Virus record (IMG/VR): IMGVR_UViG_3300020122_000238
Span: 186,001 to 250,000 of that record
Length of the DNA stretch: 64,000 nucleotides
Direction: 5' to 3' (one strand)
Made by a program: the position numbers and the translations under genes. Positions 2,388 to 61,466 of the stretch are shown one piece after another. How positions within the stretch are numbered: position 1 is the first letter of the stretch; every line of letters starts with the position of its first letter. The notes under the pieces were generated by a model. That model worked only from the letters and a program-made list of their open reading frames with translations. It had not been told where the DNA came from and searched no databases.

Positions 2388-2413
2388 TACAGGATGGGGC
2401 CCGTCTTGATCAA
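2388..2413 (-). promoter_or_regulatory. class I motif TTGATC-N16-TGTA
   Basis: 8 nt upstream of ATG 2379. Confidence 0.75.
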
Positions 2414-2419
2414 CCAGGG

Positions 2420-2653
2420 TCACACGATTCGTTCGAGAGTCCCTGCTTCCAAATCCTGGAGAGCCCGGATGGTCATGTGCCGTACGAGATTGCTGAAGCC
2501 GTCCCCTTGGGAGGCGAACCCGGCGAACCTCAAGACTGCCAGCCATGCGTATTCAACCCTGAACGCGATCGTCTCCCGGACCCAATCGGGCAACCCAGGG
2601 TGATTTTCGTCCAGGAACTTGTTGGTGGCAAGGAGCCGGTCGATCTCAGGCAT
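2420..2653 (-). CDS. hypothetical protein
   Basis: 77-aa ORF in a tightly packed minus-strand run. Confidence 0.55.
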   Translation of the reverse strand: MPEIDRLLATNKFLDENHPGLPDWVRETIAFRVEYAWLAVLRFAGFASQGDGFSNLVRHMTIRALQDLEAGTLERIV

Positions 2654-2657
2654 GGGG

Positions 2658-2924
2658 TCAGATCGTCCCGGGGCGCCACTTCTTCAGCCATATGTCGTAG
2701 AGCTGGTAGCCACCTCCGGCTTTTGGGTATGCCACCTCACACTCAGCGGCACACTGGGTCGCCAGCTTTTGCTCTTCGGGGGTTCCATCCCGCAAGATGT
2801 ACGGGCAGCTCCCACAGCGAGGGTTGAGGGAATGGCTACACCAGTAAGATTCCTTGCAGTTGTCGCGGATGACGATGCGCGCCTGGTTGGGATTGCTCGC
2901 CTTGTAGCCGGGGTACTTGATCAC
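2658..2924 (-). CDS. Cys-rich hypothetical protein
   Basis: 88 aa with several Cys pairs; overlaps the stop of the upstream gene. Confidence 0.6.
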   Translation of the reverse strand: MIKYPGYKASNPNQARIVIRDNCKESYWCSHSLNPRCGSCPYILRDGTPEEQKLATQCAAECEVAYPKAGGGYQLYDIWLKKWRPGTI

Positions 2925-3166
2925 TCGATCACCCTGATCCCGTCGAGGAGCGCGTTGACCTCGGACATCAAGCAGTGCGGATCGGCCGTGCAGATGAGGG
3001 CGTGGGCGAGCAGCCTCGCCCGATGCTGGGCCGTGGCCAGGTTGGCGTTGACGCAGACGTACAGCTCGTAAGGCTTCCCCAGGCCGAGGAGCACGTTGTA
3101 GCCACCGCCGTTCGGAACGCGGGTAATCAGGACTTCGTCACGGGCTGCCTCCAGTTGGGTCGTCAT
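2921..3166 (-). CDS. hypothetical protein
   Basis: 81 aa; promoter motif 8 nt upstream. Confidence 0.65.
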   Translation of the reverse strand: MTTQLEAARDEVLITRVPNGGGYNVLLGLGKPYELYVCVNANLATAQHRARLLAHALICTADPHCLMSEVNALLDGIRVIE

Positions 3167-3174
3167 GAGGGACC

Positions 3175-3201
3175 TACAGAGGGACGGGGTGGGGTGATCA
3201 A
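3175..3201 (-). promoter_or_regulatory. class I motif TTGATC-N17-TGTA
   Basis: 8 nt upstream of ATG 3166; its TGA is the stop of ORF 3198..3632. Confidence 0.7.
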
Positions 3202-3632
3202 CCCTGATTCTCCTCTGTGATGAGACGGTGAACCCGGCGGAGCAGGATCCGCTTCCACTCGACCTTCTCTGGAGTCAGGTGCGACGGAAGCGGGCAGTCA
3301 GGCGAGAGGATGTTGGGGATCCTACCCTCGTGCTCCTTCATCGCGTCCTGGAGCCGCCGAGCGGTGGATTCCCAGTACGAGATCATGGTCTTGACCTTGT
3401 TCGCCTCCTTCTTCAGATCCTCCTTCCCTTCGGGGGTGGCCTTGGGGAACTGCGCCGAGAGCTTGTTCAGCTCCGCGCGAGCATCGTCGAGCTTCTGAAT
3501 GGGCTCCCGGAGCTGCAACCCCAGAACAGCGATCTGTTCCACAGCATTCGCCTCATCCGCTCCGAGCCGTCGGAGCATGAGGCACTCCATGATATCGAGG
3601 GGGTGATCAACGATAACGCGGCGAGGGAGCAT
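3198..3632 (-). CDS. stand-alone seryl-tRNA synthetase N-terminal coiled-coil (tRNA-binding arm)-like protein
   Basis: ML....DHP....L..R start, heptad coiled coil (RAELNKLS) and IPNILSPDCP match the SerRS N-domain ending IPNIPHPDVP; no catalytic domain. Confidence 0.7.
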   Translation of the reverse strand: MLPRRVIVDHPLDIMECLMLRRLGADEANAVEQIAVLGLQLREPIQKLDDARAELNKLSAQFPKATPEGKEDLKKEANKVKTMISYWESTARRLQDAMKEHEGRIPNILSPDCPLPSHLTPEKVEWKRILLRRVHRLITEENQG

Positions 3633-6749: not shown

Positions 6750-7001
6750 TTACTTCGCGATAGCCTTCGCGAGGTGCTTCAGGTAGGGACGAACGGGGGC
6801 GTTCGCGAAGTCGATCTTGACGAGCATCGTCTTGATCCCCGCCAGCTCCGTCACGGGGGCCGTCTTCATGACGTCCACGAGGATCCCGATGGTCATGTAG
6901 TTGGTCCCGCTGGGCCCCTCCACTTCGAGGGGCTCTTCGAGAGAGATTTCCTTCTCGCTGAGGAAGGTCTTGAGCCACGTCAGGAAGGTCTTAGTAGTCA
7001 T
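6750..7001 (-). CDS. hypothetical phage-type protein
   Basis: 83 aa; class I motif 8 nt upstream. Confidence 0.7.
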   Translation of the reverse strand: MTTKTFLTWLKTFLSEKEISLEEPLEVEGPSGTNYMTIGILVDVMKTAPVTELAGIKTMLVKIDFANAPVRPYLKHLAKAIAK

Positions 7002-7009
7002 GAAGTCCC

Positions 7010-7035
7010 TACAAATTTAGGGCCGCCCAGATCAA
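7010..7035 (-). promoter_or_regulatory. class I motif TTGATC-N16-TGTA
   Basis: 8 nt upstream of ATG 7001. Confidence 0.75.
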
Positions 7036-7082
7036 CCATGAAGTTGGGGATGTGTAACCCCTAATTCGGTGTAAGAAGGGTC

Positions 7083-7847: not shown

Positions 7848-7874
7848 AATGATCTCTCTTCGTGTGTGGGTTGG

Positions 7875-7900
7875 TTGATCGGGGGTAGGGTTAATCTGTA
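7875..7900 (+). promoter_or_regulatory. class I motif TTGATC-N16-TGTA
   Basis: 8 nt upstream of ATG 7909. Confidence 0.75.
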
Positions 7901-7908
7901 GAGAAACC

Positions 7909-8277
7909 ATGTACCGAACCGCACCCCTCACCGATCGTACCTTCATGGAAACTCTCGCGTCCGAGATCGCGGAGGTCTTCTACAAGACTTCCCTCGAAAA
8001 CGGTACGCAGGACATCGTCATCACGGGCGTCTCCAGTCCGCGTGGGACGCACCTCCTCCGAGGCTACCCGCGGGACCAGTTCATCAACCTGGTGCTGGGC
8101 CCGAACCCGGACATGGAGAACGTTCCCGAGGAGCTGCGCAAGAGCGCCCTGGAGACGGCCCCGTGCGAGAGCGGCTGTGCCACCTGGATCCTCTTCCAGG
8201 AGGGAAGCCCGCGAGCCCCCATTCAGGTGTCGCTCATGCAGCTTCCGCCGCCCCCGCCCGCGTACTGTGACGCCTGA
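7909..8277 (+). CDS. hypothetical protein
   Basis: 122 aa directly after a class I motif. Confidence 0.7.
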   Translation: MYRTAPLTDRTFMETLASEIAEVFYKTSLENGTQDIVITGVSSPRGTHLLRGYPRDQFINLVLGPNPDMENVPEELRKSALETAPCESGCATWILFQEGSPRAPIQVSLMQLPPPPPAYCDA

Positions 8278-11831: not shown

Positions 11832-13505
11832 ATGAAACGACGTCTTGCCCTCGGGCTTCTCTTCCTGGTCGCTCTGACCCTGTACTACTACGCCCCGGCG
11901 TTCGTTCGCTGGCGGGTGAGCGAGAAACTCGCAGAGCGCTACCCGGATGTGAAGGTGGACCTCATCGAACCCCAATGGGGGAAGACGGTCCTTCACACCG
12001 TGACGTTCGATCGAGATTGGGTCTGCGGGAAGCTCGACACCGTCACGATCACCTGGAAGGACGCCATCACAATCCAGGGGGGCACCGTTCGCGTGTACCC
12101 CGAAAAGCGGCCCGCATCGACTGGGGAGGGGTCTGGCAAAGACATCACCATCACGGACCTCGAAGGTACAGTGATATCCCCCGAAGGTGTCTTTAGCTTC
12201 GGAGGTCTCTCCCTGCATGGCCCCATGGTGACCATCGACAATGTCGGGGCGCACAGGTATGGCCGAAATGCCTACCTCAATGGGGTCAAGTTCAACAAGA
12301 ACCACCTGGACTTCGTTCACGTCGATTCGGCGTCGATGGTCATCCCGGAAGACGGCCCTGACCAGCTCGGGACGTTGACCGCCACAGCTATCGAGGTCTC
12401 CCGCAACCCCGAAAAGGAATGGCGGGCGTCCATCGAACATGCCGAGATCGCGGAGCTGAAAGCGAGCGCTTCGTCAATCCGTCTCGAAGAGTACACGGGC
12501 GAAGACAAGATCCACCGAATGGCCATCCTTCTGGGGGAAGCCACCATCGAGCACCCGAAGCTCTTCAGCAAGCCTCTGACCGTGCATCAGATGCGAATCC
12601 CGGTGGATGCCTACACGTTCGAGAGCGGAGAATTCACGGTCTGGCACAACTCGGCCTTCACCCCTGTGATCAAGGGGAACTTCAGGAAGAAGACCCTTGA
12701 GGGGAAGGGCTCCTGTTCTGATTGGCTTGAGACATTGCCAGACCAGCTCAGGAACGAGTCCGTCAAGCAATTGGACATGACGGGGAACATGTCGTTCGAT
12801 GTCTCGACGGATCCTCCGCACGCCTTCTTTCTCTACACGTGCAAGGTTTCGTGTGATGTCCCGCTGTTCAAGGCTCTCAAAGAGGTGTTCGTTTACCCTA
12901 TCCTTCAGGCGGATGGATCTCCTGGTCTCCGATCGTCGGGACCGAAGGGGAAAGACTGGACGCCACTCTCCCAGGTGAGCCCTGATGTGGTCACGGCTTT
13001 GACCACCATGGAAGACCCGGGCTTCTTCCAGCATCGAGGGCTCAGTGGGATGGCCATCGAGAACTCGTTCCAGATGAACCTCAAGGCGAACAAGTTCGTG
13101 CGCGGGGGATCGACCCTCACGATGCAGCTCGCGAAGAACCTCTGGCTCACTCAGGAGAAGACCCTCGGCCGCAAGGTTCAGGAGGCCTTCTTGACGATGG
13201 GCTTGGAAAGCTGCCTCTCGAAGGAAGAGATCCTCGCGCTCTACGTGAATGTGGTCGAGTTCGGCAAGGGGCTCTACGGGATCAGCCCGGCGGCCCGGAA
13301 GTACTTCAAGACCTCGGCCATGGGCTTGGCTCCCGAGGAGGCCTTCTACCTCGTGTCGATCCTCCCCCATCCTCGGACCGCCAATCCTCCGGATGCGGCC
13401 ACCTTGACCCGCGTGAAGAAGCTGATAGCCCGGTTCACCAAGGAAGGCCGGATCCCCGATATGGGGATCAACGACAGCCCGATCGACGACGCCGGCTGGG
13501 AGTAG
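11832..13505 (+). CDS. membrane-anchored monofunctional peptidoglycan transglycosylase (GT51)
   Basis: N-terminal TM; EDPGFFQHRG, GGSTLTMQLAKNL, RKVQE, KEEILALYVN and YGISPAARKYF motifs; no transpeptidase domain. Confidence 0.9.
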   Translation: MKRRLALGLLFLVALTLYYYAPAFVRWRVSEKLAERYPDVKVDLIEPQWGKTVLHTVTFDRDWVCGKLDTVTITWKDAITIQGGTVRVYPEKRPASTGEGSGKDITITDLEGTVISPEGVFSFGGLSLHGPMVTIDNVGAHRYGRNAYLNGVKFNKNHLDFVHVDSASMVIPEDGPDQLGTLTATAIEVSRNPEKEWRASIEHAEIAELKASASSIRLEEYTGEDKIHRMAILLGEATIEHPKLFSKPLTVHQMRIPVDAYTFESGEFTVWHNSAFTPVIKGNFRKKTLEGKGSCSDWLETLPDQLRNESVKQLDMTGNMSFDVSTDPPHAFFLYTCKVSCDVPLFKALKEVFVYPILQADGSPGLRSSGPKGKDWTPLSQVSPDVVTALTTMEDPGFFQHRGLSGMAIENSFQMNLKANKFVRGGSTLTMQLAKNLWLTQEKTLGRKVQEAFLTMGLESCLSKEEILALYVNVVEFGKGLYGISPAARKYFKTSAMGLAPEEAFYLVSILPHPRTANPPDAATLTRVKKLIARFTKEGRIPDMGINDSPIDDAGWE

Positions 13506-13506
13506 G

Positions 13507-13532
13507 TTGATCCTGGGGTATCCCTGTATGTA
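13507..13532 (+). promoter_or_regulatory. class I motif TTGATC-N16-TGTA
   Basis: 10 nt upstream of ATG 13543. Confidence 0.75.
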
Positions 13533-13542
13533 AGTATGGGAC

Positions 13543-13791
13543 ATGATCCATTACATCACGGCACATGTCTCTGAAGGTCAAGATCCTACCAACCCCCACC
13601 ATATCGGATACGACGACGAAACGGACGAAATCTGTTTTATTTACAGTAAATGGTACAGTGTGTACCCAGGTCGAAGGGCTCTTCGACCTACATTCGGCAT
13701 TTTTCATAAATGCCTCGCGTCGATCGCTCGGGACGCAATCTTGGCCAAGATTGCGTCGGGGGAGTTGATCCGGAAATTTCCCGTTCTGTAG
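13543..13791 (+). CDS. hypothetical protein (AT-richer)
   Basis: 82 aa after a class I motif. Confidence 0.6.
   Translation: MIHYITAHVSEGQDPTNPHHIGYDDETDEICFIYSKWYSVYPGRRALRPTFGIFHKCLASIARDAILAKIASGELIRKFPVL
13765..13790 (+). promoter_or_regulatory. class I motif TTGATC-N16-TGTA
   Basis: 8 nt upstream of micro-ORF ATG 13799. Confidence 0.7.
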
Positions 13792-13828
13792 GACCTACAT
13801 GGACGTCAAGATCATTAGGCGCAAAGGG

Positions 13829-13854
13829 TTGATCCCCGCGGGTCTGAACCTGTA
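13829..13854 (+). promoter_or_regulatory. class I motif TTGATC-N16-TGTA
   Basis: 8 nt upstream of ATG 13863. Confidence 0.75.
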
Positions 13855-13862
13855 GGAGCTTT

Positions 13863-14072
13863 ATGGTAGACGACGAAGTGTCATCGCGTCCTGAGGACGC
13901 GATGACACCCGAAGAAGCTGAGGCCAAACGGAAAATCGCGCTTGCTGTATGGTGGCAAGCGTTCGCCATTAGCGGCGATTTGGCTGATTCCCCGGTCGGT
14001 CTTGCTTACTATGAGGCCGAAAGAGCCTGTCACCCTTACGGTTGGCTTGGTGGAAAAGTGATCAGAAGTTGA
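13863..14072 (+). CDS. hypothetical protein
   Basis: 69 aa; its stop lies within the next TTGATC. Confidence 0.6.
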   Translation: MVDDEVSSRPEDAMTPEEAEAKRKIALAVWWQAFAISGDLADSPVGLAYYEAERACHPYGWLGGKVIRS

Positions 14073-14094
14073 TCCCTGCGTTCTTCAGCCTGTA
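14069..14094 (+). promoter_or_regulatory. class I motif TTGATC-N16-TGTA
   Basis: 11 nt upstream of ATG 14106. Confidence 0.75.
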
Positions 14095-14105
14095 GGAGCC
14101 TCACC

Positions 14106-14330
14106 ATGAAACCTGATCGATCTGTGCTCCCCTTGATATTTGGGACAAGTCACGAAATTCCCGCTCGGGACGTTCAAATTGGAGATGAGATTGCAATCAG
14201 AAATAGCTGTGGCGGACTAGAGAGTTGGGCCTGTGTAGTGGGTACACTCAAGTACAAAATCATTCAGACGAAGGTTTGCATGTATGACGTATGCCGTGAT
14301 GACGAGTTGGTAGAAGTCCGTGCAAAATGA
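14106..14330 (+). CDS. hypothetical protein
   Basis: 74 aa after a class I motif. Confidence 0.6.
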   Translation: MKPDRSVLPLIFGTSHEIPARDVQIGDEIAIRNSCGGLESWACVVGTLKYKIIQTKVCMYDVCRDDELVEVRAK

Positions 14331-14357: not shown

Positions 14358-14810
14358 ATGCGAAGCATTCTGAGATCGATGATCTGTTCTACTTTTGAGA
14401 GCGTCTGCGGCAAATGGCAGTCCAGACAGCCCGTGCCGCAGGCCTTCAAGTTCACGTTCCGCCTTCAGACGAACCACGAGGTGGAAGAGGGCTACCGCTA
14501 CCTCGACGTCCTGATCTATGGCGAGTCGAACTACGTCCAGGTCTACTGCCGAGAACGGTCGAATGTCATCTCGCTGGACGACATGGAGGAATCGGACCCC
14601 GAGGACCAGACGGGCGAGATGGTCCCCAAAGAGGGGAAGGGCATCGTCAAGACCACGAAGCCGTGGGAAAAGGTCGCCGACCATGATTCGTGCTGGCGCG
14701 AGGGGATCGAGAAAATACTCCAAACCTACGAGCCTCGAATCAACATGCTGGACGCGCCGAACGAGGGATGGTGGTCGCTGGTCTCTCCCAAAAGCGAAGG
14801 GATCAGTTGA
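14358..14810 (+). CDS. hypothetical protein
   Basis: 150 aa; its stop lies within the next TTGATC. Confidence 0.65.
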   Translation: MRSILRSMICSTFESVCGKWQSRQPVPQAFKFTFRLQTNHEVEEGYRYLDVLIYGESNYVQVYCRERSNVISLDDMEESDPEDQTGEMVPKEGKGIVKTTKPWEKVADHDSCWREGIEKILQTYEPRINMLDAPNEGWWSLVSPKSEGIS

Positions 14811-14832
14811 TCCTGATCCCCCAAAATCTGTA
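14807..14832 (+). promoter_or_regulatory. class I motif TTGATC-N16-TGTA
   Basis: upstream of the large vWA gene; followed by GGTGTA at 14851-14856. Confidence 0.7.
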
Positions 14833-17477: not shown

Positions 17478-17480
17478 GGG

Positions 17481-17506
17481 TTGATCCGAGACATGGTTCC
17501 TCTGTA
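17481..17506 (+). promoter_or_regulatory. class I motif TTGATC-N16-TGTA
   Basis: 11 nt upstream of ATG 17518. Confidence 0.75.
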
Positions 17507-17517
17507 GAAGGGGGACC

Positions 17518-17775
17518 ATGTCTGACTCCTACTCCTCCCGCGTCGCGTTGACCCCCATTATCCGGTGGGTCACCCTCATCCTCCTCTTCGTGATGAAGCA
17601 TGGCGACCTGGTCCCCTCCCATGAGGGATCGGTCGACAGGTACGAGTCTCCCGAAGATTCGGATGAAGATTCGAATGACGAGGTCAATTTTCCTGGCAAC
17701 TCCGTTGACTTCACCCCCGTCGACTGTGTCGACGTAGACGACCTGGATTCAATCGAATCCTACGACATCGTCTGA
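17518..17775 (+). CDS. acidic hypothetical protein with N-terminal hydrophobic segment
   Basis: 85 aa after a class I motif. Confidence 0.55.
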   Translation: MSDSYSSRVALTPIIRWVTLILLFVMKHGDLVPSHEGSVDRYESPEDSDEDSNDEVNFPGNSVDFTPVDCVDVDDLDSIESYDIV

Positions 17776-21017: not shown

Positions 21018-21152
21018 AGCCGGGTCCTGTTTTGCGATCCCTCTGGGACCCTTTCCCGCATGTCAGAAGACGACGCTGACGCCTTCTATAGATCCTACAA
21101 AACTGAAGTCCTGCACACATCTGAAATTCTTCGCACAAAAGGTCTCTGGTAG

Positions 21153-21178
21153 TTGATCCGCGGACGAGTCGAGCTGTA
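21153..21178 (+). promoter_or_regulatory. class I motif TTGATC-N16-TGTA
   Basis: 12 nt upstream of ATG 21191. Confidence 0.75.
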
Positions 21179-21190
21179 TTGCTCCCCGCC

Positions 21191-21355
21191 ATGACGATCG
21201 ACTACAACGACCTCTTCCACGCGAAACCCGCGGATGTCGTCAGGCTTGCCCGAGCTATCAAGATTCCGCTCGGGACGAAGTCCCACGATTCCCTGTGCAA
21301 GGCCGTCGCGCAGTGGATCCGCAAGAACCCCACCCCGAAGCTGAAAAACCGCTAG
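21191..21355 (+). CDS. small basic protein (54 aa, not in ORF track)
   Basis: MTIDYNDLFHAKPADVVRLARAIKIP...; follows a class I motif; GC3 bias. Confidence 0.6.
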   Translation: MTIDYNDLFHAKPADVVRLARAIKIPLGTKSHDSLCKAVAQWIRKNPTPKLKNR

Positions 21356-24855: not shown

Positions 24856-24858
24856 GGG

Positions 24859-24884
24859 TTGATCAGACGGGCCGTTCTCTTGTA
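24859..24884 (+). promoter_or_regulatory. class I motif TTGATC-N16-TGTA
   Basis: 10 nt upstream of TTG 24895. Confidence 0.7.
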
Positions 24885-24894
24885 CAGTCCGACA

Positions 24895-25310
24895 TTGCAA
24901 CCCAACACGTTCTGCGGCTTCTGCGGCTTCCGATTTTTCGAGGGAGCCGCATGGCCTCGGAAGTGTTCAAATTGTACACGAACAACCTACCGGAATCCAA
25001 TGCCGGTAGTCGTGGCCATCATTTTCGTTCGTGGATTCGACCCCGACGAAAGTACCACATGGAAGTCTCCGAAGAAGTAGGAATAGTCACCTCTTCTTTG
25101 GAGTACCGTCTCCTCAACATCAAGACATCAACCACAGGATCGAGCCTGCTCATCTTCTGTGCAGGTCCGATCGTCCGCTGGGACGAGGTCGAATGGGCAT
25201 TCAAACCCAACAGGGAGGTCTCCGAGGTTGCTGTTGCCACCTTCGAGACTGAGCTGGGCTTCTCGCTTCACACGGAAGCCCTTCGTCAATACGCCCTCAA
25301 CCCAGTATAA
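24895..25310 (+). pseudogene. disrupted Zn-ribbon Nudix hydrolase
   Basis: FCGFCG..WPRKCSNC...YRNPMPVV in one frame and EVSEEVGI (end of Nudix box) plus the C-terminus in another; the strand leading to PGG is missing. Confidence 0.7.
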
Positions 25311-25568: not shown

Positions 25569-25843
25569 ACCTCGAAATTCACGACAACACGACGGATGAG
25601 GGGGGCACCTTGATAGGAGTCGCCAGAAATCTGGACTACATGTACCAGGCGGAGCAGTGGGTGATCGACTCCAAGGACGAGAGGCGGGTCGCTCGCTTCG
25701 TCCTGTTCTCGGGCCCTATGACGCCGATTCGCGAATGGCGTATGGTCAACGGAGAGCCGAGCGACGTCCCCATCACGCCGGGGACGGTCGCCGATCCCCG
25801 AACGTTCGCCCGCGAGACAACGGACCGAACATGTAGAGGTTGA
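25565..25843 (+). CDS. hypothetical protein
   Basis: GTGA overlap start; its stop lies within the next TTGATC. Confidence 0.6.
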   Translation: MNLEIHDNTTDEGGTLIGVARNLDYMYQAEQWVIDSKDERRVARFVLFSGPMTPIREWRMVNGEPSDVPITPGTVADPRTFARETTDRTCRG

Positions 25844-25865
25844 TCGGCAGCTCCCTCGGACTGTA
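25840..25865 (+). promoter_or_regulatory. class I motif TTGATC-N16-TGTA
   Basis: 8 nt upstream of ATG 25874. Confidence 0.75.
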
Positions 25866-25873
25866 GGACGGGC

Positions 25874-26107
25874 ATGAACACTGAAGAAATGGTGGACGCC
25901 CTATTCGCCAACAAGCCCGTGAAAGTCAGAGTGCCCGAAACGGGCCTGGCGTTCACGATCGCTCCGAAGAGGGGGTCTTTCGGGATCCTGTTCTTCGGGA
26001 TCATCCCCGAGGGAAAGAAGCGCGCTCTGAAAACTCATGGGTACATGCTCATGGGGCGGAATGAGATGTGGGCCTGGGTAAACAGTCTTGAGTCCGTGGA
26101 GAACTGA
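25874..26107 (+). CDS. hypothetical protein
   Basis: 77 aa after a class I motif. Confidence 0.65.
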   Translation: MNTEEMVDALFANKPVKVRVPETGLAFTIAPKRGSFGILFFGIIPEGKKRALKTHGYMLMGRNEMWAWVNSLESVEN

Positions 26108-26108: not shown

Positions 26109-26468
26109 ATGTTGAGCACCATTGAACGAGCCATTGCTCTCAGAACGCACTACCGGGAAATCCTGGTCGCTCGCAACGGACACTGGGGTACTTGCTCTGG
26201 GTGCCCTCGCGACGAAGATGGTGTCCCACACCCTGGACGCTGTTCGGAGTATTCGCGATCCGATCATCACATTCCGGCCAGCGAAACGCATCGTGGTGAA
26301 GGCGTAAACACGACCGAAGCCATCGCTGCATTGGCTCGGGTTCTTTACGAGCGCGCTCCGAAGCCTGTGAAGACTGGCCACGCGGAAGCCGACGCGAAAG
26401 CGGAATGGCTGGCTGCGTGGGGCTGTGTGGAAGAAGCCGAGAAGAAATTTTATCCTCCTCGTGGTTGA
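26109..26468 (+). CDS. hypothetical protein
   Basis: ATG 1 nt after the upstream stop; its stop lies within the next TTGATC. Confidence 0.55.
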   Translation: MLSTIERAIALRTHYREILVARNGHWGTCSGCPRDEDGVPHPGRCSEYSRSDHHIPASETHRGEGVNTTEAIAALARVLYERAPKPVKTGHAEADAKAEWLAAWGCVEEAEKKFYPPRG

Positions 26469-26490
26469 TCGACAGCCACCCCCGACTGTA
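26465..26490 (+). promoter_or_regulatory. class I motif TTGATC-N16-TGTA
   Basis: 8 nt upstream of ATG 26499. Confidence 0.75.
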
Positions 26491-26498
26491 GGACTCCC

Positions 26499-37275: not shown

Positions 37276-37283
37276 GGTGAAAC

Positions 37284-44563: not shown

Positions 44564-45109
44564 TTAGTTCGTCGAGTTGGCGAGGTAACAGGTCCCGCGC
44601 ATCATGAAGAACGGCCCCCCATTGGGGTACACGACCGTCACCGCGCAGGAGTCGCCGTTGTCGCAGAACCCGATCTCCTCGACCTTGCCCGTGCAGAGCT
44701 GAAGAGCCGCCGCCCAGTCCTCGTTGGTGGGCACATCGGGCAGCGGACCATCCGTCTTGTAGATGGTGACCCCGTGCGGGGGAAAGCCGACTGCGTCGAT
44801 CCCATCCTTGCCGTCGCAGCCCTTCACGAAGAGGGAGGGCTTGGCCGGGTCCTTGTCCACGATCTGACAGGTGACCGGGATGCGCTCGACGCACTCACCC
44901 TGGAAGCAGATGCCCGTGGTGGGTCCGCCGCCTTCCAAGGGGCAGACGGTTCCGTTTTCCCCACAGAGGTTCGGTTTGCCGCCCGTACCGGAGCTGGATG
45001 AAGTCGTCGTCGTCGAGCTGGATGCGTCGGACCACGGAGCAGTATCGTCCGTGCCGCAGCCGCAGCCGAAGATGAAACCAGAGAAAATGATCAAAATGGT
45101 GTGCTTCAT
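44564..45109 (-). CDS. lipoprotein with Ser/Thr linker and Cys-rich domain (paralogue B)
   Basis: IFGC lipobox, SSSTTTTSSSSGTGG linker, Cys spacing shared with paralogue A. Confidence 0.75.
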   Translation of the reverse strand: MKHTILIIFSGFIFGCGCGTDDTAPWSDASSSTTTTSSSSGTGGKPNLCGENGTVCPLEGGGPTTGICFQGECVERIPVTCQIVDKDPAKPSLFVKGCDGKDGIDAVGFPPHGVTIYKTDGPLPDVPTNEDWAAALQLCTGKVEEIGFCDNGDSCAVTVVYPNGGPFFMMRGTCYLANSTN

Positions 45110-45117
45110 GTCGCCTC

Positions 45118-45143
45118 TATAGTCCGACCTGGATTCGGATCAA
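45118..45143 (-). promoter_or_regulatory. class I variant TTGATC-N16-TATA
   Basis: 8 nt upstream of ATG 45109. Confidence 0.65.
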
Positions 45144-45164
45144 CTGGTGTAAGTAAAAAAAGAT

Positions 45165-48421: not shown

Positions 48422-48748
48422 ATGAAGTGGAACGTCGACAAAGCCCTGACCGACTTGGCGAAGTGGGCGAGCGATCGGGACACCTTGGCGGGCATCTCGC
48501 AGGTCTACGTGGACGCTTCGAGGGCGACAGAGGTTGGGGTGCATCCGACCCCGCCCGAGACGAAGAAGGGGGTCGTCTACGTCTGGAAGGTGTACCTGCT
48601 CGCCGGGATGAACATCCACAGTTTCTACGGCCGGACGATTCAGGAGGCCTACCACAAGGCTCGCCGGATGCTTCGGCCCCCGGTCGGCAAGTCGACCAAG
48701 AAGAAGGTTGATCGGTTCAAACGTCGGCGTGTAGGACACGAGCAATGA
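48422..48748 (+). CDS. hypothetical protein
   Basis: MKWNVDKAL...; GC3 bias. Confidence 0.6.
   Translation: MKWNVDKALTDLAKWASDRDTLAGISQVYVDASRATEVGVHPTPPETKKGVVYVWKVYLLAGMNIHSFYGRTIQEAYHKARRMLRPPVGKSTKKKVDRFKRRRVGHEQ
48708..48733 (+). promoter_or_regulatory. class I motif TTGATC-N16-TGTA
   Basis: 11 nt upstream of ATG 48745. Confidence 0.7.
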
Positions 48749-50498: not shown

Positions 50499-51665
50499 TT
50501 ACCAGTCGGAGCCGCCGCCGCTGGAGTCCGAGCTGGACGATGAGTCCGAGCTGGACGATGAGTCCGAGCTGCTTCCTCCGCGGTCCGAGGGCGGAGAAGT
50601 CGAGGAGACCCAGTTCGAGGACCCGCCACCCGCATCGTAGCTCGAAGAACCTCCCGAGCTGGGCTCGTAGCTCGGCGTGGGCGTGTAGCTGTGACGTTGG
50701 ATCGGAACCTCACGCTCGATGTACACGTCCCGCTCGACGACGCGACCCCGATCCCGATGCAAGGCATCTCCGATGAGCATGCCCGTGAGCAGGTCGTTGC
50801 CATTCGAGCCGTAGTGGCCACCGTACCCGCCGTTGTTGTTGATGACCGTCGTGGAACTCGATGCAGCGGCAGCCGCGGGAGCCGGCTGGATGTAGGTGGG
50901 AGCCGCGACCCGGCGAGGAATGGGGGTGCTCGCCACGTTGTAGTCACCTCGGCCGATGCCACCCGTCCTCGCCCTGGCGGCCCCTGCTGAGGCGCTGGCT
51001 GTCGCCGTGGACTTCCGGATACCCTCGGCCCACGCACCTTCCTCGATGTTCCGCGAGCGCATTTCCTGAGCTTCCTCGCGGGTTTCGTTCAACACGGCCT
51101 GGTAGCGGGCCTGATCCGCCTGCGACTTGCGGTACAGGTAGATGGCGAACCAGACGAGCGAGCCGACACCGAGGAGGATGAGAGCCCAGCCACCGACACC
51201 GAGGCCTTCATGCACGACGATCGGGGGCGGGGGAGCGAGAGTCCCGCTGGTCGTCCTGGTCGACACATCGGCACGGGCTCCGATGGCCGTGAGTCCGCCC
51301 ACCCAGTTCTTCTCGCGAAAGGCCGGATTGCCCGCGGCGAAGATGGAGTCCTGATCGAGGGCCTTCACCGGGACGCCGACCCCGAACCGAACGATCGTCG
51401 AGTGATGGTCCGGATCGAGCGCGATGACGATGACGTTGGGCGAGTCCACCCAGGCTTTGGCCGCGCTGACGAGCGCTTCCTTGGCGGGCGAAACCCGGAT
51501 GAGGACATGGGTCTCGAAGGACCAGCTCGACCCTCTGGCCTGGAGGTTCGCGACATCAGCCGACGAAAGCAGATGCGCCTCATCGTTGACGACGACATGT
51601 CCAGCCATGGCGGACAAGGTCCAGAAGAAGACGGCGAATGCGAGGGAAATGCTGTGTTTTTTCAT
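50499..51665 (-). CDS. TPM (DUF477-like) domain membrane protein with Gly/Ser-rich tail
   Basis: signal peptide, VNDEAHLLS, one TM, C-terminal SSGGGSDW tail. Confidence 0.7.
   Translation of the reverse strand: MKKHSISLAFAVFFWTLSAMAGHVVVNDEAHLLSSADVANLQARGSSWSFETHVLIRVSPAKEALVSAAKAWVDSPNVIVIALDPDHHSTIVRFGVGVPVKALDQDSIFAAGNPAFREKNWVGGLTAIGARADVSTRTTSGTLAPPPPIVVHEGLGVGGWALILLGVGSLVWFAIYLYRKSQADQARYQAVLNETREEAQEMRSRNIEEGAWAEGIRKSTATASASAGAARARTGGIGRGDYNVASTPIPRRVAAPTYIQPAPAAAAASSSTTVINNNGGYGGHYGSNGNDLLTGMLIGDALHRDRGRVVERDVYIEREVPIQRHSYTPTPSYEPSSGGSSSYDAGGGSSNWVSSTSPPSDRGGSSSDSSSSSDSSSSSDSSGGGSDW
50524..50571. repeat. 18-bp tandem repeat (about 2.7 copies) encoding a Ser-rich tail
   Basis: unit GAGTCCGAGCTGGACGAT. 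Confidence 0.85.
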
Positions 51666-51679
51666 GTCTTCTCTTCAAT

Positions 51680-52786
51680 CTACACCAGCTTGAGATCAAC
51701 CGAAGCGCGTTCAAGAGAGTCGAACGATGCCCTCAAATCCCCGACACCACCACGGTAGGCGAGAGCGTAAGGGGTAGGGTTGTCCCCAGCGGCATCCGTC
51801 AGTTTTTTGGAAACGGCGTGCCCGATCAGACCTTCCAAGATGATCATGGCACCCACACCCCCATTTCGGATCTTATGCGCGAGGTTGGATGATATCTTGT
51901 GCCCGCCGTTGTCGGTGGGATACCATTCGGCCTCGATGTTGAAGCGCTCCCGAATCGTCCGGAGCTTCTCGTCTTTGACGATGCCCCCGATGATGACGAG
52001 CGGCTTGTTTTGAAGCCGGGCCCTGAGCGTGGGCCATTCCCCAGGGGTGACTGTCTTCGCGAGGATCACATCTTCTTCCCCCTCGAAGGCGGCGAGCTTC
52101 TCCCTGGATTCGCGGGCGATCCTATCCCAGTCGTCGTTATGATCCTTCGCGAGTCCTCGTACGTAGTTGTGGGGGCAGTTGTCCCCACGGACCTTGGAGA
52201 GCAGGGGGATCGAGCGTTCGACCTGCCAGAACAGGTGATGGGTTGAGGGCAGCCGCGTCAACATCTGGCGCACCTCAGCCGTGAGAGCCTGCACGTAGGT
52301 TTGGATCTGAGCAGGGGGTTTCTTCCGAAGATCTGACGTGGCGAAATCCTCGATCTCATCGAGGATCCTCTGTGCACTATGTGCGAGAGGATCTTCCTCG
52401 ACTGCCGGGTCTTCGTGCGGGGGTGCCTGGGGTGGGAGGACCACCTTGACAGGAGGCACCTCTACCACCTTGACAGGGACAGGCGAGGCTTTCAGCTCTT
52501 GCGGGGGAGCTTGAAACGGAACCGCACCGATCAACTCCAGAAGGCTTGTCAACGCATCGCATAGTTTGAGACGCTCTGCATCGATGATTGAAGGCGCTGG
52601 AGTGGACGCTTCCTGTTTGATGGCCGCGAGCATGGCGGCGATCGTTCGTTGTTCCGCATCCTCTCTGTGCGCGACCTCGAAGGAGGTGAGTCGTTCGCGG
52701 AGACATGCGACCATGTCAGATATCGGCCGCACCTCGGCTTCGACGCTGAGAGCACAGGCATTGTATAGTAAATTGGGCAGTTCCAT
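51680..52786 (-). CDS. helical protein with C-terminal DUF2325-like domain
   Basis: LVIIGG...AMIILEGLIGHAVSKKL; start uncertain; ends GTG TAG inside GGTGTA. Confidence 0.6.
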   Translation of the reverse strand: MELPNLLYNACALSVEAEVRPISDMVACLRERLTSFEVAHREDAEQRTIAAMLAAIKQEASTPAPSIIDAERLKLCDALTSLLELIGAVPFQAPPQELKASPVPVKVVEVPPVKVVLPPQAPPHEDPAVEEDPLAHSAQRILDEIEDFATSDLRKKPPAQIQTYVQALTAEVRQMLTRLPSTHHLFWQVERSIPLLSKVRGDNCPHNYVRGLAKDHNDDWDRIARESREKLAAFEGEEDVILAKTVTPGEWPTLRARLQNKPLVIIGGIVKDEKLRTIRERFNIEAEWYPTDNGGHKISSNLAHKIRNGGVGAMIILEGLIGHAVSKKLTDAAGDNPTPYALAYRGGVGDLRASFDSLERASVDLKLV

Positions 52787-59136: not shown

Positions 59137-59223
59137 CCTTACAGGCTACGTCTGTGTTACCCTCGCCTCGAAACCCTGCCAGATCAGCGCGATCTAGGGC
59201 AAAGCCGGTGTATAGGAGTACTC

Positions 59224-59649
59224 ATGAGCGAAGACCTGTATGATTTGGACAGCTATTGGGAGTTGAGGGTTCTACCTCCTCGGCCTCCCGAACCTGAGAT
59301 CGAAGCAGCGCCAGAACCCATTCAAGAACTCACTTTCACTCCGAGGGGAGTGTACTTGGGCCTATTCACAGCCCTACCCCAAGACACCAATGAGGGTGTG
59401 GAGCTTACCGATACCAGATACGCTCGCGCATCTGTGAATCCCAGATTCACATCAAACAGTAGGGGGGAATCGGTAGCTGAGATCACACACCGATTCCCCC
59501 CTATGAGCACTCCCGTGGTTGTGATGGGTGGGGGTCTTTGGGATGCCCCTGTGGGGGGCAATCTCCTCTACTTTTCAAGCCTAGCCGTGAATCTCCGCGT
59601 CGACCTCGGAATGAACGCGGAGATTCACCTCACCGTCTCTGCTGACTAG
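59224..59649 (+). CDS. tail-fibre-associated-like protein with N-terminal acidic-YW-Pro tag
   Basis: VYLGLFTALP...YARA...LWDAPVGGNLLY resembles a small family often annotated as phage tail fibre protein. Confidence 0.65.
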   Translation: MSEDLYDLDSYWELRVLPPRPPEPEIEAAPEPIQELTFTPRGVYLGLFTALPQDTNEGVELTDTRYARASVNPRFTSNSRGESVAEITHRFPPMSTPVVVMGGGLWDAPVGGNLLYFSSLAVNLRVDLGMNAEIHLTVSAD

Positions 59650-60035
59650 AGCTGTACCTTCACCTGAGCGTAAGCGAGCGCATCGGCCCAGCCCTCTTCG
59701 GAGGCGGGAAAGCGAGCGGAAGGACCCGGGGCCTCCGTGGCGTCACGAGAAGCCTTCTTAGGGTCTCGGAAGTGCGGGTCGATGGTCCGCCAGCGCATCG
59801 CATTCAGAGACGAGACGCCCAGATAGACGAGGACCTTCACCCCCTCGTAACTGCATGTCTTGCAGTTGGGGTAGGACACCTTGATGACGAGGTGCCGTCC
59901 AACCGCAACTGCGTCCACGATTGTGTAGTTCTTGGCGTCGGGTGTCTTGGGCACGGAGGAGTAGCTTTCGTAGGGGTCTCTGTAGTCCTTGTGGCTGCTA
60001 CAGCTCGGGTCATTGGCGCTGTGTCGACAGGTCAT
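59646..60035 (-). CDS. hypothetical phage-type protein
   Basis: NY.IV...G..LVIKVSYPNC..YEG.KVLVY...DPHF...ARF...GW. Confidence 0.7.
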   Translation of the reverse strand: MTCRHSANDPSCSSHKDYRDPYESYSSVPKTPDAKNYTIVDAVAVGRHLVIKVSYPNCKTCSYEGVKVLVYLGVSSLNAMRWRTIDPHFRDPKKASRDATEAPGPSARFPASEEGWADALAYAQVKVQL

Positions 60036-60059
60036 GGGCTCTCTTCAAGGGTAAGACGT

Positions 60060-60299
60060 TTAGACGTAACGTGGATCCCGCAAGTACGGAAACAGCTCTT
60101 GCATCGAACCAGGCTTGGCCGGAGGGAACCCTTCACCATCCGGCACCCCCAGCATCTTGCTGAAGTTCGGCTCGCCCGTTTCAGCCGCCATATCATTCAG
60201 GGTATCGGCGAAAGACGCTGCCAGATCCTCCGGAAGATCGGGGTTGGCGTCGATGGCCTTTTGTTCTGCGGGCGTCCAGTTCGTCGTCTTCATCGTCAC
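60060..60299 (-). CDS. hypothetical protein
   Basis: 79 aa coupled to the upstream gene. Confidence 0.6.
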   Translation of the reverse strand: MTMKTTNWTPAEQKAIDANPDLPEDLAASFADTLNDMAAETGEPNFSKMLGVPDGEGFPPAKPGSMQELFPYLRDPRYV

Positions 60300-61429
60300 T
60301 TCGCCGTGTTGCGCAGCTCGGTCGAGCTGATGTCCCAGCGGCCCGGGACGTCCTTGAACAGAAAGACAAGGATGTCGACGACATCCTTGTGGGCGTAGAT
60401 GATGTCACTGCCCGTCTTGTACTCACCCTTGACGAGCCGACCGAGCACGTAAAAGCGCGTGCAGTGGGCCGAGAACTCCTCCAGCAAGGGCGCGACTTCG
60501 ATGCCCCACTTGGGGTCGAGCATCGTCGCCAGGGTGTCCGCCCCGAGCACGAAGGCAGCACCCGGGAAGGCCTTCGCCTTGTCGAGGAAGAGCGGGTCGT
60601 TCTCCGACAAGAGGTAGTTACGCCCTCGCATCCCAGCCACCCGTTGCAACAGCTCCGGGACCGTGACAGGCGTCTTGTGGACCGGGTTGATGGTGGTCAT
60701 GTGGACCAACGTCTGGTAGAACCTGTAGGCGAGAAGATGCGCTTCCCGGCCCCCCTTCTCGTGCCCATCATGGAAGGGATTGAAGCTCCCCGGGTAGATA
60801 AGGGTCGTCAGGGGGTTGATGTCCGCAGCCGTTCCGCGCGTCCCATCCGCCTTGAAGTAGGGGTGAGCGAAGAGACGAGCCCGCGCTTTGTCCATGGCCT
60901 CGATGGGCTCGAACTTCACCCCGAGGATGTCGGGGTCGACCGGGAGGCCCATCGCTCGCGAGAGGATGTTCAACCCCATCGAATCGGCGATCATCCCGTC
61001 CACCGTGCGCTGCTCCCAGCCCACTCCTTTGGGGATGACAGCGGAGGCGATGTAGCAGCCCCCATCACCGAAGGCCGCGACGAAGATCCGGTGATCTCCC
61101 CGGTGCTCCCGAGTCGAAGCGACCGAAGCAGCGAGGCCAATCCCGATTGCCTTCGAGCCAGGCTTCACGGCCCGGAGGTACGCGGTCATGGCGAGGTCGA
61201 GCGCGATGTTCTCGTCGCAGTACTTCTCGGGGATGAATCCGAGATGGCGCGCGGTGGCCTCGGGCTCGTACGGGAAGCACGCTTCGATGAAGAAGTTAGA
61301 AATGCCCGGAGGAGCCCAGAGGCGGGACTGGACCCCTGCTCCGGCCCCCGTGGCGATGACGACGACCCGTGGAGCGTCAGCCCCAAGGTCGCGGAGGATT
61401 TCGATGTTGCGTGTGGTGTTGGTGCTCAT
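60296..61429 (-). CDS. CinA-like domain fused to a nicotinamide-nucleotide adenylyltransferase (NMNAT)-like domain
   Basis: YPGSFNPFHDGH (HxGH), FVLGADT, DISSTELR; N-terminal TGAG...GIGLAASVAS...RGDHRIFVA. Confidence 0.75.
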   Translation of the reverse strand: MSTNTTRNIEILRDLGADAPRVVVIATGAGAGVQSRLWAPPGISNFFIEACFPYEPEATARHLGFIPEKYCDENIALDLAMTAYLRAVKPGSKAIGIGLAASVASTREHRGDHRIFVAAFGDGGCYIASAVIPKGVGWEQRTVDGMIADSMGLNILSRAMGLPVDPDILGVKFEPIEAMDKARARLFAHPYFKADGTRGTAADINPLTTLIYPGSFNPFHDGHEKGGREAHLLAYRFYQTLVHMTTINPVHKTPVTVPELLQRVAGMRGRNYLLSENDPLFLDKAKAFPGAAFVLGADTLATMLDPKWGIEVAPLLEEFSAHCTRFYVLGRLVKGEYKTGSDIIYAHKDVVDILVFLFKDVPGRWDISSTELRNTAK

Positions 61430-61440
61430 GTTGTCGGCTC

Positions 61441-61466
61441 TACAAGACGAGAAAGCCACGGATCAA
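61441..61466 (-). promoter_or_regulatory. class I motif TTGATC-N16-TGTA
   Basis: 11 nt upstream of ATG 61429. Confidence 0.75.

What the first reader, a model, noticed from the sequence alone, without database searches (positions are those of the whole stretch)
2388..61466. Class I promoter-like motif RGTTGATC-N16-TGTA in 20 copies with near-invariant spacing and almost no leader
Seen: 14 plus-strand copies (7875, 13507, 13765, 13829, 14069, 14807, 17481, 21153, 24859, 25840, 26465, 35892, 37250, 48708) and 6 minus-strand copies (2413, 3201, 7035, 35876, 45143, 61466). All 20 have RGTTGATC. The spacer is 16 in 19 copies and 17 in one, and one has TATA for TGTA. In 19 copies the start codon follows 8-12 nt later, mostly with no Shine-Dalgarno. 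Established: this has the two-box geometry of a sigma70-family promoter but non-housekeeping boxes. Inference: promoters for a phage-encoded or alternative host sigma factor, making leaderless or near-leaderless mRNAs for small early-type genes.
Basis: partly seen in the sequence, partly recalled or inferred. Interest (0 to 1): 0.7.

Follow-up and report, generated by a model that had tools for sequence, protein, structure and literature searches.

The report
Phage sigma-factor promoters making leaderless mRNAs
A two-box DNA signal repeated about 20 times in this stretch of an uncultivated ~363-kb phage is almost certainly a family of promoters, probably read by a sigma factor that the phage clade itself encodes, placed so close to each gene that the messenger RNA should begin at or within a few bases of the start codon.

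Summary
All 20 copies are at the stated places: 18 exact against 0.01 expected, one with a 17-nt spacer, one with TATA. There is also one degenerate extra copy.

The full consensus is R-GTTGATC-N16-TGTAGGA-N5-ATG. The A of ATG is most often the 9th base after TGTA. It is usually preceded by C.

The window lies in a 275-kb fragment of a ~363-kb phage genome from IMG/VR. That fragment has 38 copies. A relative at 80-94% identity has 87. Between the two, the boxes and the ATG are 96-100% conserved and the spacer about 80%.

No RNA polymerase gene was found. The relative encodes a divergent ECF-like sigma factor (302 aa, with sigma region 2 split by an insertion). The motif sits directly upstream of that gene. 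The same holds for sigma homologues in five further lineages, down to 32% identity. This self-promoter pattern is the usual way cognate ECF promoters are assigned.

The nearest known promoter type is ECF11 (TGATCC-N16-CGTA). This motif has a spacer one base shorter and TGTA in place of CGTA.

Still inferred, not shown: the transcription start site, dependence on this sigma factor, timing of expression, and the host. I rate it a new variant of a known kind.

The parts
2377..2415 (-). Class I promoter plus start codon. GGTTGATC-N16-TGTA-N8-ATG, driving a 98-aa ORF (2083-2379).
   Evidence: boxes conserved in G001
3164..3203 (-). Class I promoter with a 17-nt spacer. ATG 8 nt after TGTA; 81-aa ORF (2921-3166).
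6999..7037 (-). Class I promoter, N16, ATG at +8; 83-aa ORF (6750-7001).
7873..7911 (+). Class I promoter, N16, ATG at +8; 122-aa ORF (7909-8277).
13505..13545 (+). Class I promoter, N16, ATG at +10; 82-aa ORF (13543-13791).
13763..13801 (+). Class I promoter, N16, ATG at +8. It opens only a 17-codon ORF that ends in the TAG of the next promoter's TGTAG. A perfect hairpin lies just upstream.
13827..13865 (+). Class I promoter, N16, ATG at +8; 69-aa ORF (13863-14072).
14067..14108 (+). Class I promoter, N16, ATG at +11; 74-aa ORF (14106-14330).
14805..14832 (+). Class I promoter with no start codon behind it. It is a remnant: in G001 the orthologous promoter drives a small gene that is missing here. 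A class II element (GGTGTA at 14851) and the 864-aa vWA-like gene (14883-17477) follow.
17479..17520 (+). Class I promoter, N16, ATG at +11; 85-aa ORF (17518-17775).
21151..21193 (+). Class I promoter, N16, ATG at +12; 54-aa ORF (21191-21355).
24857..24897 (+). Class I promoter, N16. The only candidate start is TTG at +10 (61-aa ORF), so the gene assignment is uncertain.
25838..25876 (+). Class I promoter, N16, ATG at +8; 77-aa ORF (25874-26107).
26463..26501 (+). Class I promoter, N16, ATG at +8; 120-aa ORF (26499-26861).
35839..35878 (-). Class I promoter, N16, ATG at +9; 148-aa P-loop kinase-like ORF (35395-35841). It stands back to back with the next entry, the two -35 boxes 13 nt apart.
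35890..35930 (+). Class I promoter, N16, ATG at +10; 441-aa ORF (35928-37253) with a PEP-utilising mobile domain.
37248..37286 (+). Class I promoter, N16, ATG at +8; 79-aa ORF (37284-37523).
45107..45145 (-). Class I promoter variant with TATA for TGTA (TGTA in G001). ATG at +8; 181-aa ORF (44564-45109).
48706..48747 (+). Class I promoter, N16, ATG at +11; 81-aa ORF (48745-48990).
51663..51701 (-). GGTTGATC-N16-TGAA-N8-ATG; 388-aa ORF (50499-51665). A GGTGTA also lies inside the spacer.
61427..61468 (-). Class I promoter, N16, ATG at +11; 377-aa cytidylyltransferase-like ORF (60296-61429).

Best explanation
The motif is a family of promoters. I propose this mechanism.

1. Host core RNA polymerase carries a phage-encoded, divergent ECF-like sigma factor. 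This is the 302-aa P0001 family, encoded in the part of the genome that the window's record lacks.
2. The C-terminal helix-turn-helix of that sigma reads GTTGATC as a -35 element.
3. Its split region 2 reads TGTA(GGA) as a -10 element, across a fixed 16-bp spacer.
4. Transcription starts at the purine 9 nt after TGTA. In most copies that purine is the A of the ATG. In the copies where the ATG lies 9-12 nt after TGTA the leader would be 1-4 nt.
5. The result is many short, mostly monocistronic, leaderless transcripts for small accessory genes.
6. The sigma gene carries the same promoter, so the circuit reinforces itself.

Shown here: the motif, its geometry, its conservation, its position relative to genes, the sigma-like gene and its self-promoter.

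Inferred: which protein reads the motif, the exact start site, and leaderless translation.
For: Statistics:
- 18 exact copies in the window against 0.01 expected.
- 38 copies in the 275-kb record, 35 of them with spacer exactly 16.
- 87 copies in relative G001, with 0 for the reversed control pattern.

Position:
- 33 of 38 copies (G000) and 68 of 87 (G001) have a start codon 8-13 nt after TGTA on the same strand. The mode is 8 nt.
- In 17 of 27 same-strand cases the -35 box abuts or overlaps the upstream gene's stop codon.

Selection: in 24 orthologous G000/G001 pairs the boxes and the ATG are 96-100% identical and the spacer about 80%. Indels in the spacer restore a length of 16.

Start-site geometry:
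- The position before the ATG is C in 24 of 35 copies. The 9th base after TGTA is a purine in 30 of 35.
- A second promoter class, YGGTGTA, places the ATG at 10 nt instead of 8. A distance that is sharp and differs by class fits a start codon tied to the transcription start.

No phage RNA polymerase:
- No Pfam beta, beta' or T7-type hit (beta' PF00623 was searched in G000 only, and the T7-type search had no positive control).
- No DFDGD-type catalytic motif in six frames of G000 or G001. Together the two records span essentially the whole genome.

Sigma factor:
- TIGR02937 matches 9 of 9 family members, best E-value 3.4e-7. Sigma70_r2 matches 7 of 9.
- The AlphaFold model has pLDDT 85.6. Its best structural matches are almost all sigma domain 2 (Z 5-7, about 80 residues, rmsd about 3 Å).

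Self-promoter: the motif lies directly upstream of the sigma gene in G001, L041, L044, L045, L166 and, as GTTGATC-N16-CGTA, in L164. Sigma identity to P0001 across these runs from 100% down to 32%. About half of ECF sigmas autoregulate, and this is how their promoters are predicted (bioRxiv 10.1101/2020.06.23.168245).

Clade restriction:
- In IMG/VR only this phage group has the motif in many copies.
- It is at chance level in 301 Planctomycetota genomes.

Architecture: it resembles ECF11 promoters, TGATCC-N16-CGTA (PMC5507510, PMC4336711, PMC5036791).
Against: - There is no transcript data, so neither the start site nor sigma dependence is observed.
- The sigma gene is not in the window's own 275-kb record. 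Its presence there is inferred from synteny with G001.
- Three of nine sigma lineages show no motif upstream: L042, L165 and the short L163.
- A self-dependent sigma needs a first trigger. Only in G001 is a class II element seen just upstream of the sigma promoter.
- The structural Z-scores are middling, Foldseek E-values are not significant, and the best sequence match to solved structures has E 0.06.
- AGGA five bases before the ATG could be a ribosome site, which would fit leadered transcripts from upstream promoters.
- A second phage protein with a sigma region 4 domain (236 aa, G000 23072-23782) could also read a -35-like box.
Confidence: 0.6

Rival explanations
1. Class I promoters are read by a host-encoded alternative sigma factor, for example an ECF11-type RpoE/ChrR-like sigma that the phage exploits. 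The phage sigma-like protein would then serve another promoter class.
For: The -35 core TGATC(C) and the xGTA -10 box closely resemble experimentally defined ECF11 promoters, TGATCC-N16-CGTA. One G000 copy and the L164 sigma promoter have CGTA itself.
Against: Counted the same way, the spacer is one base shorter than in ECF11, and the -10 box is TGTA in 35 of 38 copies. Host ECF sigmas are normally held inactive by anti-sigma factors, which makes them a poor basis for about 90 promoters. The phage clade carries its own sigma, with this motif upstream of the gene in 6 lineages. The motif is not enriched in 301 Planctomycetota genomes, although the host is unknown.
Confidence: 0.14
2. Class I promoters are early promoters for the host housekeeping sigma. 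TTGATC would be a near-consensus -35 box, and the unusual -10 box would be tolerated or helped by a phage factor.
For: TTGATC matches TTGACA at 4 of 6 positions, including TTGA. A 16-bp spacer to TGTAGG is within 17 +/- 1. That register puts +1 exactly on the A of the ATG. The genes driven are small ORFans, typical of early genes.
Against: In that register the -10 box has G at -11 and G at -7, where primary sigmas need A and T. This rests on established knowledge of sigma70 region 2. The G preceding TTGATC is invariant and the purine before it is present in 34 of 35 copies, which a primary sigma would not require. Canonical sigma70-type sites are not above chance near the sigma gene.
Confidence: 0.1
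3. Another phage factor reads the motif. Candidates are the 236-aa protein with a sigma region 4 domain and a second helix-turn-helix, acting as an activator on the GTTGATC box, or an unrecognised phage RNA polymerase.
For: The 236-aa protein has a clear region 4 match (Pfam 2.5e-13; TIGR02937 at 48 bits, above the cut-off) but no region 2. Many large proteins of the phage have no annotation.
Against: No promoter-gene link ties this protein to the motif; its own gene has a Shine-Dalgarno-type upstream region. No catalytic RNA polymerase motif exists in either record. The two-box asymmetric geometry is what a complete sigma reads.
Confidence: 0.1
4. The motif is not a promoter. It would instead be an operator for a repressor, a recombination or mobile-cassette boundary, or a translation signal.
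For: The motif marks the boundaries of small gene cassettes, some of which differ between relatives. AGGA before the ATG could be a ribosome site.
Against: The two boxes are unrelated in sequence and are neither direct nor inverted repeats. The strict 16-bp spacing, single orientation towards the gene, C/A at the predicted -1/+1 and the copy upstream of a sigma gene all fit a promoter.
Confidence: 0.04

Closest known systems
ECF11-type promoters (RpoE/ChrR of Rhodobacter sphaeroides, RpoE2 of Shewanella, PSPTO_1043 of Pseudomonas syringae): TGATCC-N16-CGTA
   Same: Both have a TGATC(C) core in the -35 box, a four-base xGTA -10 core and a rigid spacer. In both the sigma gene is preceded by its own promoter.
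   Different: Here the -35 box is extended to R-GTTGATC, and the spacer is one base shorter (TGATC-N16 against TGATC-N17). The -10 box is TGTA(GGA), not CGTA. The sigma is phage-encoded and only remotely like SigE of R. sphaeroides (2q1z, Z 4.9). No ChrR-like anti-sigma was seen. Most copies abut a start codon.
Promoters for phage-encoded sigma factors (Bacillus phage SPO1 gp28 and gp33/34, T4 gp55, the phiEco32 ECF-like sigma). Recalled from my own knowledge; SPO1's switch to phage sigmas is also stated in the abstract of PMC13401047.
   Same: A phage redirects host core polymerase to its own promoter set with a sigma of its own. T4 gp55 (7d7d) is among the structural matches.
   Different: This sigma family has region 2 split by an insertion of about 120 aa. 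The promoters are ECF-like two-box sites in about 90 copies, and nearly all sit directly on a start codon.
'-10 region adjacent to ORF' leaderless expression in Deinococcus-Thermus (PMC12340547), and leaderless transcripts of Thermus phage phiYS40 (Sevostyanova 2007; recalled, and listed in that paper's references)
   Same: A promoter element lies a fixed few bases before the ATG, so that the transcript starts at the start codon.
   Different: Those use the housekeeping TANNNT -10 element of the host primary sigma. Here the element is TGTA with a GTTGATC -35 box, is clade-specific, and is probably read by a phage sigma.

Membership tests
ECF (group IV) sigma-dependent promoter | Asymmetric two-box site with a rigid spacer of about 16-18 bp | tested here: met
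   Spacer 16 in 35 copies, 17 in 3 and 15 in 1. The two boxes are unrelated in sequence.
ECF (group IV) sigma-dependent promoter | The same motif lies upstream of a cognate ECF-type sigma gene (autoregulation) | tested here: met
   The motif lies upstream of the sigma gene in G001, L041, L044, L045, L164 and L166. It is absent in L042, L165 and L163.
ECF (group IV) sigma-dependent promoter | Transcription depends on that sigma in vivo or in vitro | not testable with these tools
   No RNA runs were listed. The protein-DNA complex job was not folded.
ECF11 (RpoE/ChrR) promoter family | Consensus TGATCC-N16-CGTA | tested here: not met
   The -35 core matches, but the spacer is one base shorter and the -10 box is TGTA in 35 of 38 copies.
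ECF11 (RpoE/ChrR) promoter family | The sigma is an ECF11 orthologue paired with a ChrR-type anti-sigma | tested here: not met
   The sigma family has only 228 representatives and does not merge with general ECF sigmas. SigE of R. sphaeroides scores Z 4.9. The neighbouring genes show no anti-sigma domain.
Housekeeping sigma70-type -35/-10 promoter | -10 hexamer with A at -11 and T at -7 (TAnnnT) | tested here: not met
   In the register that puts +1 on the ATG, the hexamer is TGTAGG, with G at -11 and G at -7.
Housekeeping sigma70-type -35/-10 promoter | -35 box TTGACA-like, spacer 17 +/- 1 | tested here: met
   TTGATC matches at 4 of 6 positions, with a spacer of 16 to TGTAGG.
Leaderless-mRNA promoter architecture | The start codon sits at the position expected for +1, with pyrimidine at -1 and A at +1, and is ATG rather than GTG or TTG | tested here: met
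   ATG lies 8 nt after TGTA in 24 of about 38 copies. The position before it is C in 24 of 35, and the position itself is A in 29 of 35. The start is ATG in 36 of 38.
Leaderless-mRNA promoter architecture | Mapped primary 5' end on the start codon | not testable with these tools
   No RNA runs were listed.
Sigma70-family protein (the 302-aa P0001 family) | Sigma region 2 and region 4 recognisable by sequence profile and by fold | tested here: met
   TIGR02937 matches 9 of 9 members and Sigma70_r2 matches 7 of 9, all below the curated cut-offs. The model has pLDDT 85.6, and its top structural matches are sigma domain 2 at Z 5-7. Foldseek E-values are not significant.

The most novel reading that the evidence does not exclude
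A clade of huge phages (about 235-380 kb) runs its accessory genome as roughly 90 or more single-gene, truly leaderless transcription units. These are driven by a self-activating, structurally unusual ECF-like sigma factor with region 2 split by an insertion that carries an extra helix-turn-helix. A second leaderless promoter class, YGGTGTA-N10-ATG, covers much of the rest of the genome. Translation of the phage would then be largely independent of Shine-Dalgarno pairing. The promoter boxes would double as the stop codons (TGA, TAG) of the upstream genes.
Probability: 0.35. Interest if true: 0.75.

Novelty: new variant of a known kind. Interest (0 to 1): 0.6.

Why it matters
Transcription programmes of huge uncultivated phages are almost unknown, and their genes are mostly unannotated.

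- **Annotation.** A sharply defined, clade-specific promoter with a fixed offset to the start codon marks true gene starts, including ORFs of 50-100 aa. It also splits the genome into regulatory classes without any culture.
- **A testable system.** Pairing the promoter with a phage-borne sigma gives an orthogonal sigma-promoter pair that can be tested directly in vitro.
- **Translation.** If the transcripts are truly leaderless, this is a large natural case of a virus relying on leaderless translation. That bears on how such phages take over, or bypass, host translation initiation, and on what their hosts are.

Tried and rejected
- **RNA evidence.** Two searches for sequencing runs listed only DNA runs holding about 10% of the sampled words, and no RNA run. 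Read-laying was therefore not used.
- **Close relatives in GenBank phages.** None found by DNA or protein search.
- **Host identification.**
  - A genome scan with the phage DNA ligase found nothing.
  - The phage GroEL matched only three Planctomycetota MAGs at 43-45% identity. This is a weak lead, not a host call.
  - Class I is at chance level in 301 Planctomycetota genomes. The one outlier, G260 with 18 hits, is a repeated IS-like sequence.
  - Class II is only about 1.5-2 times its control in 41 of those genomes.
- **Dam methylation of the GATC inside the -35 box.** Rejected as special. GATC is common (2118 copies, observed/expected 0.95).
- **Structure of the sigma.** Foldseek on the better model gave no significant E-value, although sigma factors dominate its list.
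- **Complex prediction.** The sigma with promoter DNA was not folded by the tool, so it gives no evidence either way.
- **tRNA genes as a start-site ruler.**
  - The class I hit 4 nt before tRNA-Leu in G001 is probably a chance match inside a hairpin loop.
  - A class II site ends exactly 10 nt before tRNA-Ile.
  - A class I/II hybrid ends 12 nt before a tRNA with anticodon TCA.
  - These are compatible with the model but not decisive.
- **Z-genome idea.** The adenylosuccinate-synthase-like gene scores better to PurA than to PurZ, both far below the curated cut-offs.
- **Literature.** No paper links GTTGATC to a phage promoter.

Full report
**1. What the sequence is**

The window is bases 186001-250000 of a single 275,300-bp IMG/VR virus record. 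The record is linear, 58% G+C, and rated 58% complete by CheckV.

It has no close relative among GenBank phages. Two IMG/VR contigs encode a 91% identical copy of its 864-aa vWA-like protein.
- G001, 350 kb, is collinear with the window's record at 80-94% nucleotide identity but circularly permuted.
- G001 positions 235.7-328 kb correspond to the part that the window's record lacks.
- A protein of that region also lies on a 362,830-bp contig, so the whole genome is about 363 kb.
- That missing part holds 40 tRNA genes and a tmRNA gene.

**2. The observation**

RGTTGATC-N16-TGTA occurs 18 times in the window, against 0.01 expected.

In the whole record the exact boxes occur 35 times with spacer 16, three times with 17 and once with 15.

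Aligning the 35 copies extends the consensus to R-GTTGATC-N16-TGTAGGA-N5-ATG.
- The position before the ATG is C in 24 of 35 copies.
- The 9th base after TGTA is a purine in 30 of 35.

The start codon follows TGTA by exactly 8 nt in 24 copies in G000 and by 9-13 nt in most others. In G001 it follows by 8 nt in 45 of 87.

The genes driven are short: median 97.5 aa against 160.5 for all my called genes. Most have no family match.

In 17 of 27 same-strand cases the -35 box abuts or overlaps the stop codon of the upstream gene. Six times that stop is the TGA inside GTTGATC.

Copies cluster in the accessory arm. G000 175-275 kb holds 29 of the 38; the long same-strand structural and replication block holds few.

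**3. It is under selection and specific to this clade**

In 24 orthologous promoter pairs between G000 and G001, the -35 box, the TGTA and the ATG are 96-100% identical. The spacer averages about 80%, and where indels occur the spacer returns to 16.

G001 has 87 strict copies and G002 has 28, with 0 for the reversed control pattern.

In IMG/VR, multi-copy contigs are only G001, G002 and a third contig from the same sample series. All other contigs have single hits, as expected by chance.

The copy at 14805, which has no start codon, is a remnant. In G001 the same promoter drives a small gene followed by a hairpin.

**4. What reads it**

*No phage RNA polymerase was found.*
- No Pfam beta, beta' or T7-type match. 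Beta' (PF00623) was searched in G000 only, and the T7-type search had no positive control.
- No DFDGD-type catalytic motif in any frame of G000 or G001.

The host core enzyme is therefore the likely polymerase.

*The -10 box does not fit a primary sigma.* In the register that puts +1 on the ATG it reads TGTAGG, without A-11 or T-7.

*The geometry is that of ECF promoters.* The closest published type is ECF11: TGATCC-N16-CGTA in P. syringae, Shewanella and R. sphaeroides (PMC5507510, PMC4336711, PMC5036791). The match is not exact. Here the spacer is one base shorter and the -10 box is TGTA.

*The clade encodes an ECF-like sigma.* G001 carries a 302-aa protein at 280163-281071, minus strand, which JGI labels as sigma-24 family.
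- All nine close homologues match TIGR02937 (best E-value 3.4e-7), and seven match Sigma70_r2. All these scores are below the curated cut-offs.
- A profile search of 1.84 billion proteins finds only 228 representatives, so this is a separate, divergent family.
- With a 50-sequence alignment the AlphaFold model reaches pLDDT 85.6.
- An exhaustive structural comparison ranks sigma domain 2 of SigB, RpoE, SigE, AlgU, SigK, SigW, SigR, sigma70, T4 gp55 and others at the top. Z is 5-7 over about 80 residues at about 3 Å rmsd, spanning model residues 9 to about 205.
- Region 2 therefore appears to be split by an insertion of roughly 120 residues, and a helix-turn-helix domain follows at the C-terminus.
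- Foldseek E-values and the sequence search of solved structures are not significant on their own.

**5. The link between sigma and motif**

The class I motif lies immediately upstream of this sigma gene in G001, with 8 nt between TGTA and the ATG. The same holds for sigma homologues in other lineages:

| Locus | Sigma identity to P0001 | Motif upstream of the sigma gene |
|---|---|---|
| L044 | 60% | class I |
| L041 | 52% | ATTGATC-N16-TGTA-N8-ATG |
| L045 | 51% | class I |
| L166 | about 34% | class I |
| L164 | about 32% | GTTGATC-N16-CGTA |

L166 is a 235-kb contig of an NCBI assembly. Its 12.9 kb held here carries six copies of GTTGATC-N16-TGTAGTACCCnCATG.

Three lineages show no motif: L042, L165 and the short L163.

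A motif shared upstream of orthologous ECF sigma genes is the standard criterion for assigning cognate promoters, since about half of these sigmas autoregulate (10.1101/2020.06.23.168245).

This is the main reason I prefer the phage sigma over a host sigma. It remains an inference. The sigma gene is absent from the window's own incomplete record, and a self-dependent sigma needs a trigger. Only in G001 is a class II element seen just upstream.

**6. Leaderless reading**

No transcript data exist. The argument rests on geometry.
- The distance from TGTA to the start codon is sharply peaked.
- The peak differs by class: 8 nt for class I and 10 nt for YGGTGTA.
- There is a pyrimidine-purine step at the predicted -1/+1.
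- The start is ATG in 36 of 38 copies.

Copies with the ATG at +11 keep a purine at the 9th base, which would give a 3-nt leader.

This layout parallels the '-10 region adjacent to ORF' mode described for Deinococcus-Thermus (PMC12340547).

Against a purely leaderless picture, AGGA often lies five bases before the ATG. It could serve read-through transcripts.

**7. Verdict**

I rank the parts of the explanation as follows:
- promoter identity: very likely;
- assignment to the phage ECF-like sigma: the best-supported option, about 0.6;
- leaderless initiation: likely but unmeasured;
- 'early' timing: unsupported.

The motif is not a member of ECF11 but works like an ECF promoter. I rate it a new variant of a known kind.

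Noticed in passing
Window, 28 sites, e.g. 3944-3964(+), 7067-7085(+), 8927-8946(+), 11296-11315(+), 33197-33216(+), 56275-56294(-)/56295-56314(+), 63176-63195(-): A second promoter-like class, Y-GGTGTA-N10-ATG, with no -35 box. G000 has 45 copies at exactly 10 nt and G001 has 53. It is also common in the distant relative L042, which lacks class I. It precedes helicase, structural and accessory genes. Its start codon sits 2 nt further from TGTA than in class I.
   Followed up: partly
G000 23072-23782 (+) = L002:3072-3782: A 236-aa protein with a clear sigma region 4 domain (Pfam 2.5e-13), a second helix-turn-helix, an acidic N-terminus and no region 2. It could be a -35-box-binding regulator or a sigma mimic. 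One weak hit is to a Planctomycetaceae-specific sigma subfamily.
   Followed up: partly
G001 242.6-265.7 kb and 302161-302233 (the part missing from the window's record): An array of 40 tRNA genes, a tmRNA (tag ANDNALVPMQMAA) and a tRNA with anticodon TCA. One class II site ends exactly 10 nt before tRNA-Ile, so the predicted start site coincides with the mature 5' end.
   Followed up: partly
Window 27107-28423 (+): A divergent adenylosuccinate-synthase-like gene. PHROGs labels it PurZ-like, but NCBIfam scores it higher to PurA (168 bits) than to PurZ (42 bits), both far below the cut-offs. Whether the phage makes 2-aminoadenine DNA is open.
   Followed up: partly
Window 35851-35917: Two class I promoters back to back on opposite strands, their -35 boxes 13 nt apart. 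Similar divergent pairs, and overlaps of class I with class II, occur at window 45144/45146 and elsewhere.
   Followed up: no
Window 13725-13755 and 13880-13912: Perfect GC-rich inverted repeats without a T-run. One lies just upstream of the class I promoter at 13763 and one inside the next small ORF. They may be terminators or processing sites between the single-gene units.
   Followed up: no
G001 240297-242015 (-) = L034:297-2015: A phage-encoded GroEL. The only genome-collection relatives sharing its peptide words are three Planctomycetota MAGs at 43-45% identity. This is a weak hint to the host phylum.
   Followed up: partly
G000 29680-33072 (+) = L002:9680-13072: A 1130-aa protein containing an intein with a LAGLIDADG homing endonuclease domain.
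   Followed up: no
Whole G000 and G001: CTAG is strongly depleted (observed/expected 0.51 and 0.39). TTAA is very rare (55 and 29 copies). GATC is not depleted.
   Followed up: no
Window 22167-23552, 18230-19558, 28423-29337, 39791-41065: Accessory genes in the window: a nicotinamide phosphoribosyltransferase, a dNMP kinase fused to an HNH/endonuclease VII-like domain, a protein kinase-like gene with a weak match to defence kinase MAD6, and an RNA ligase-like gene.
   Followed up: no
L040/L041, L042, L044 and G001 278163-279458: An N6/N4 DNA methyltransferase gene lies a few genes from the sigma-like gene in several lineages, so this neighbourhood is conserved.
   Followed up: no
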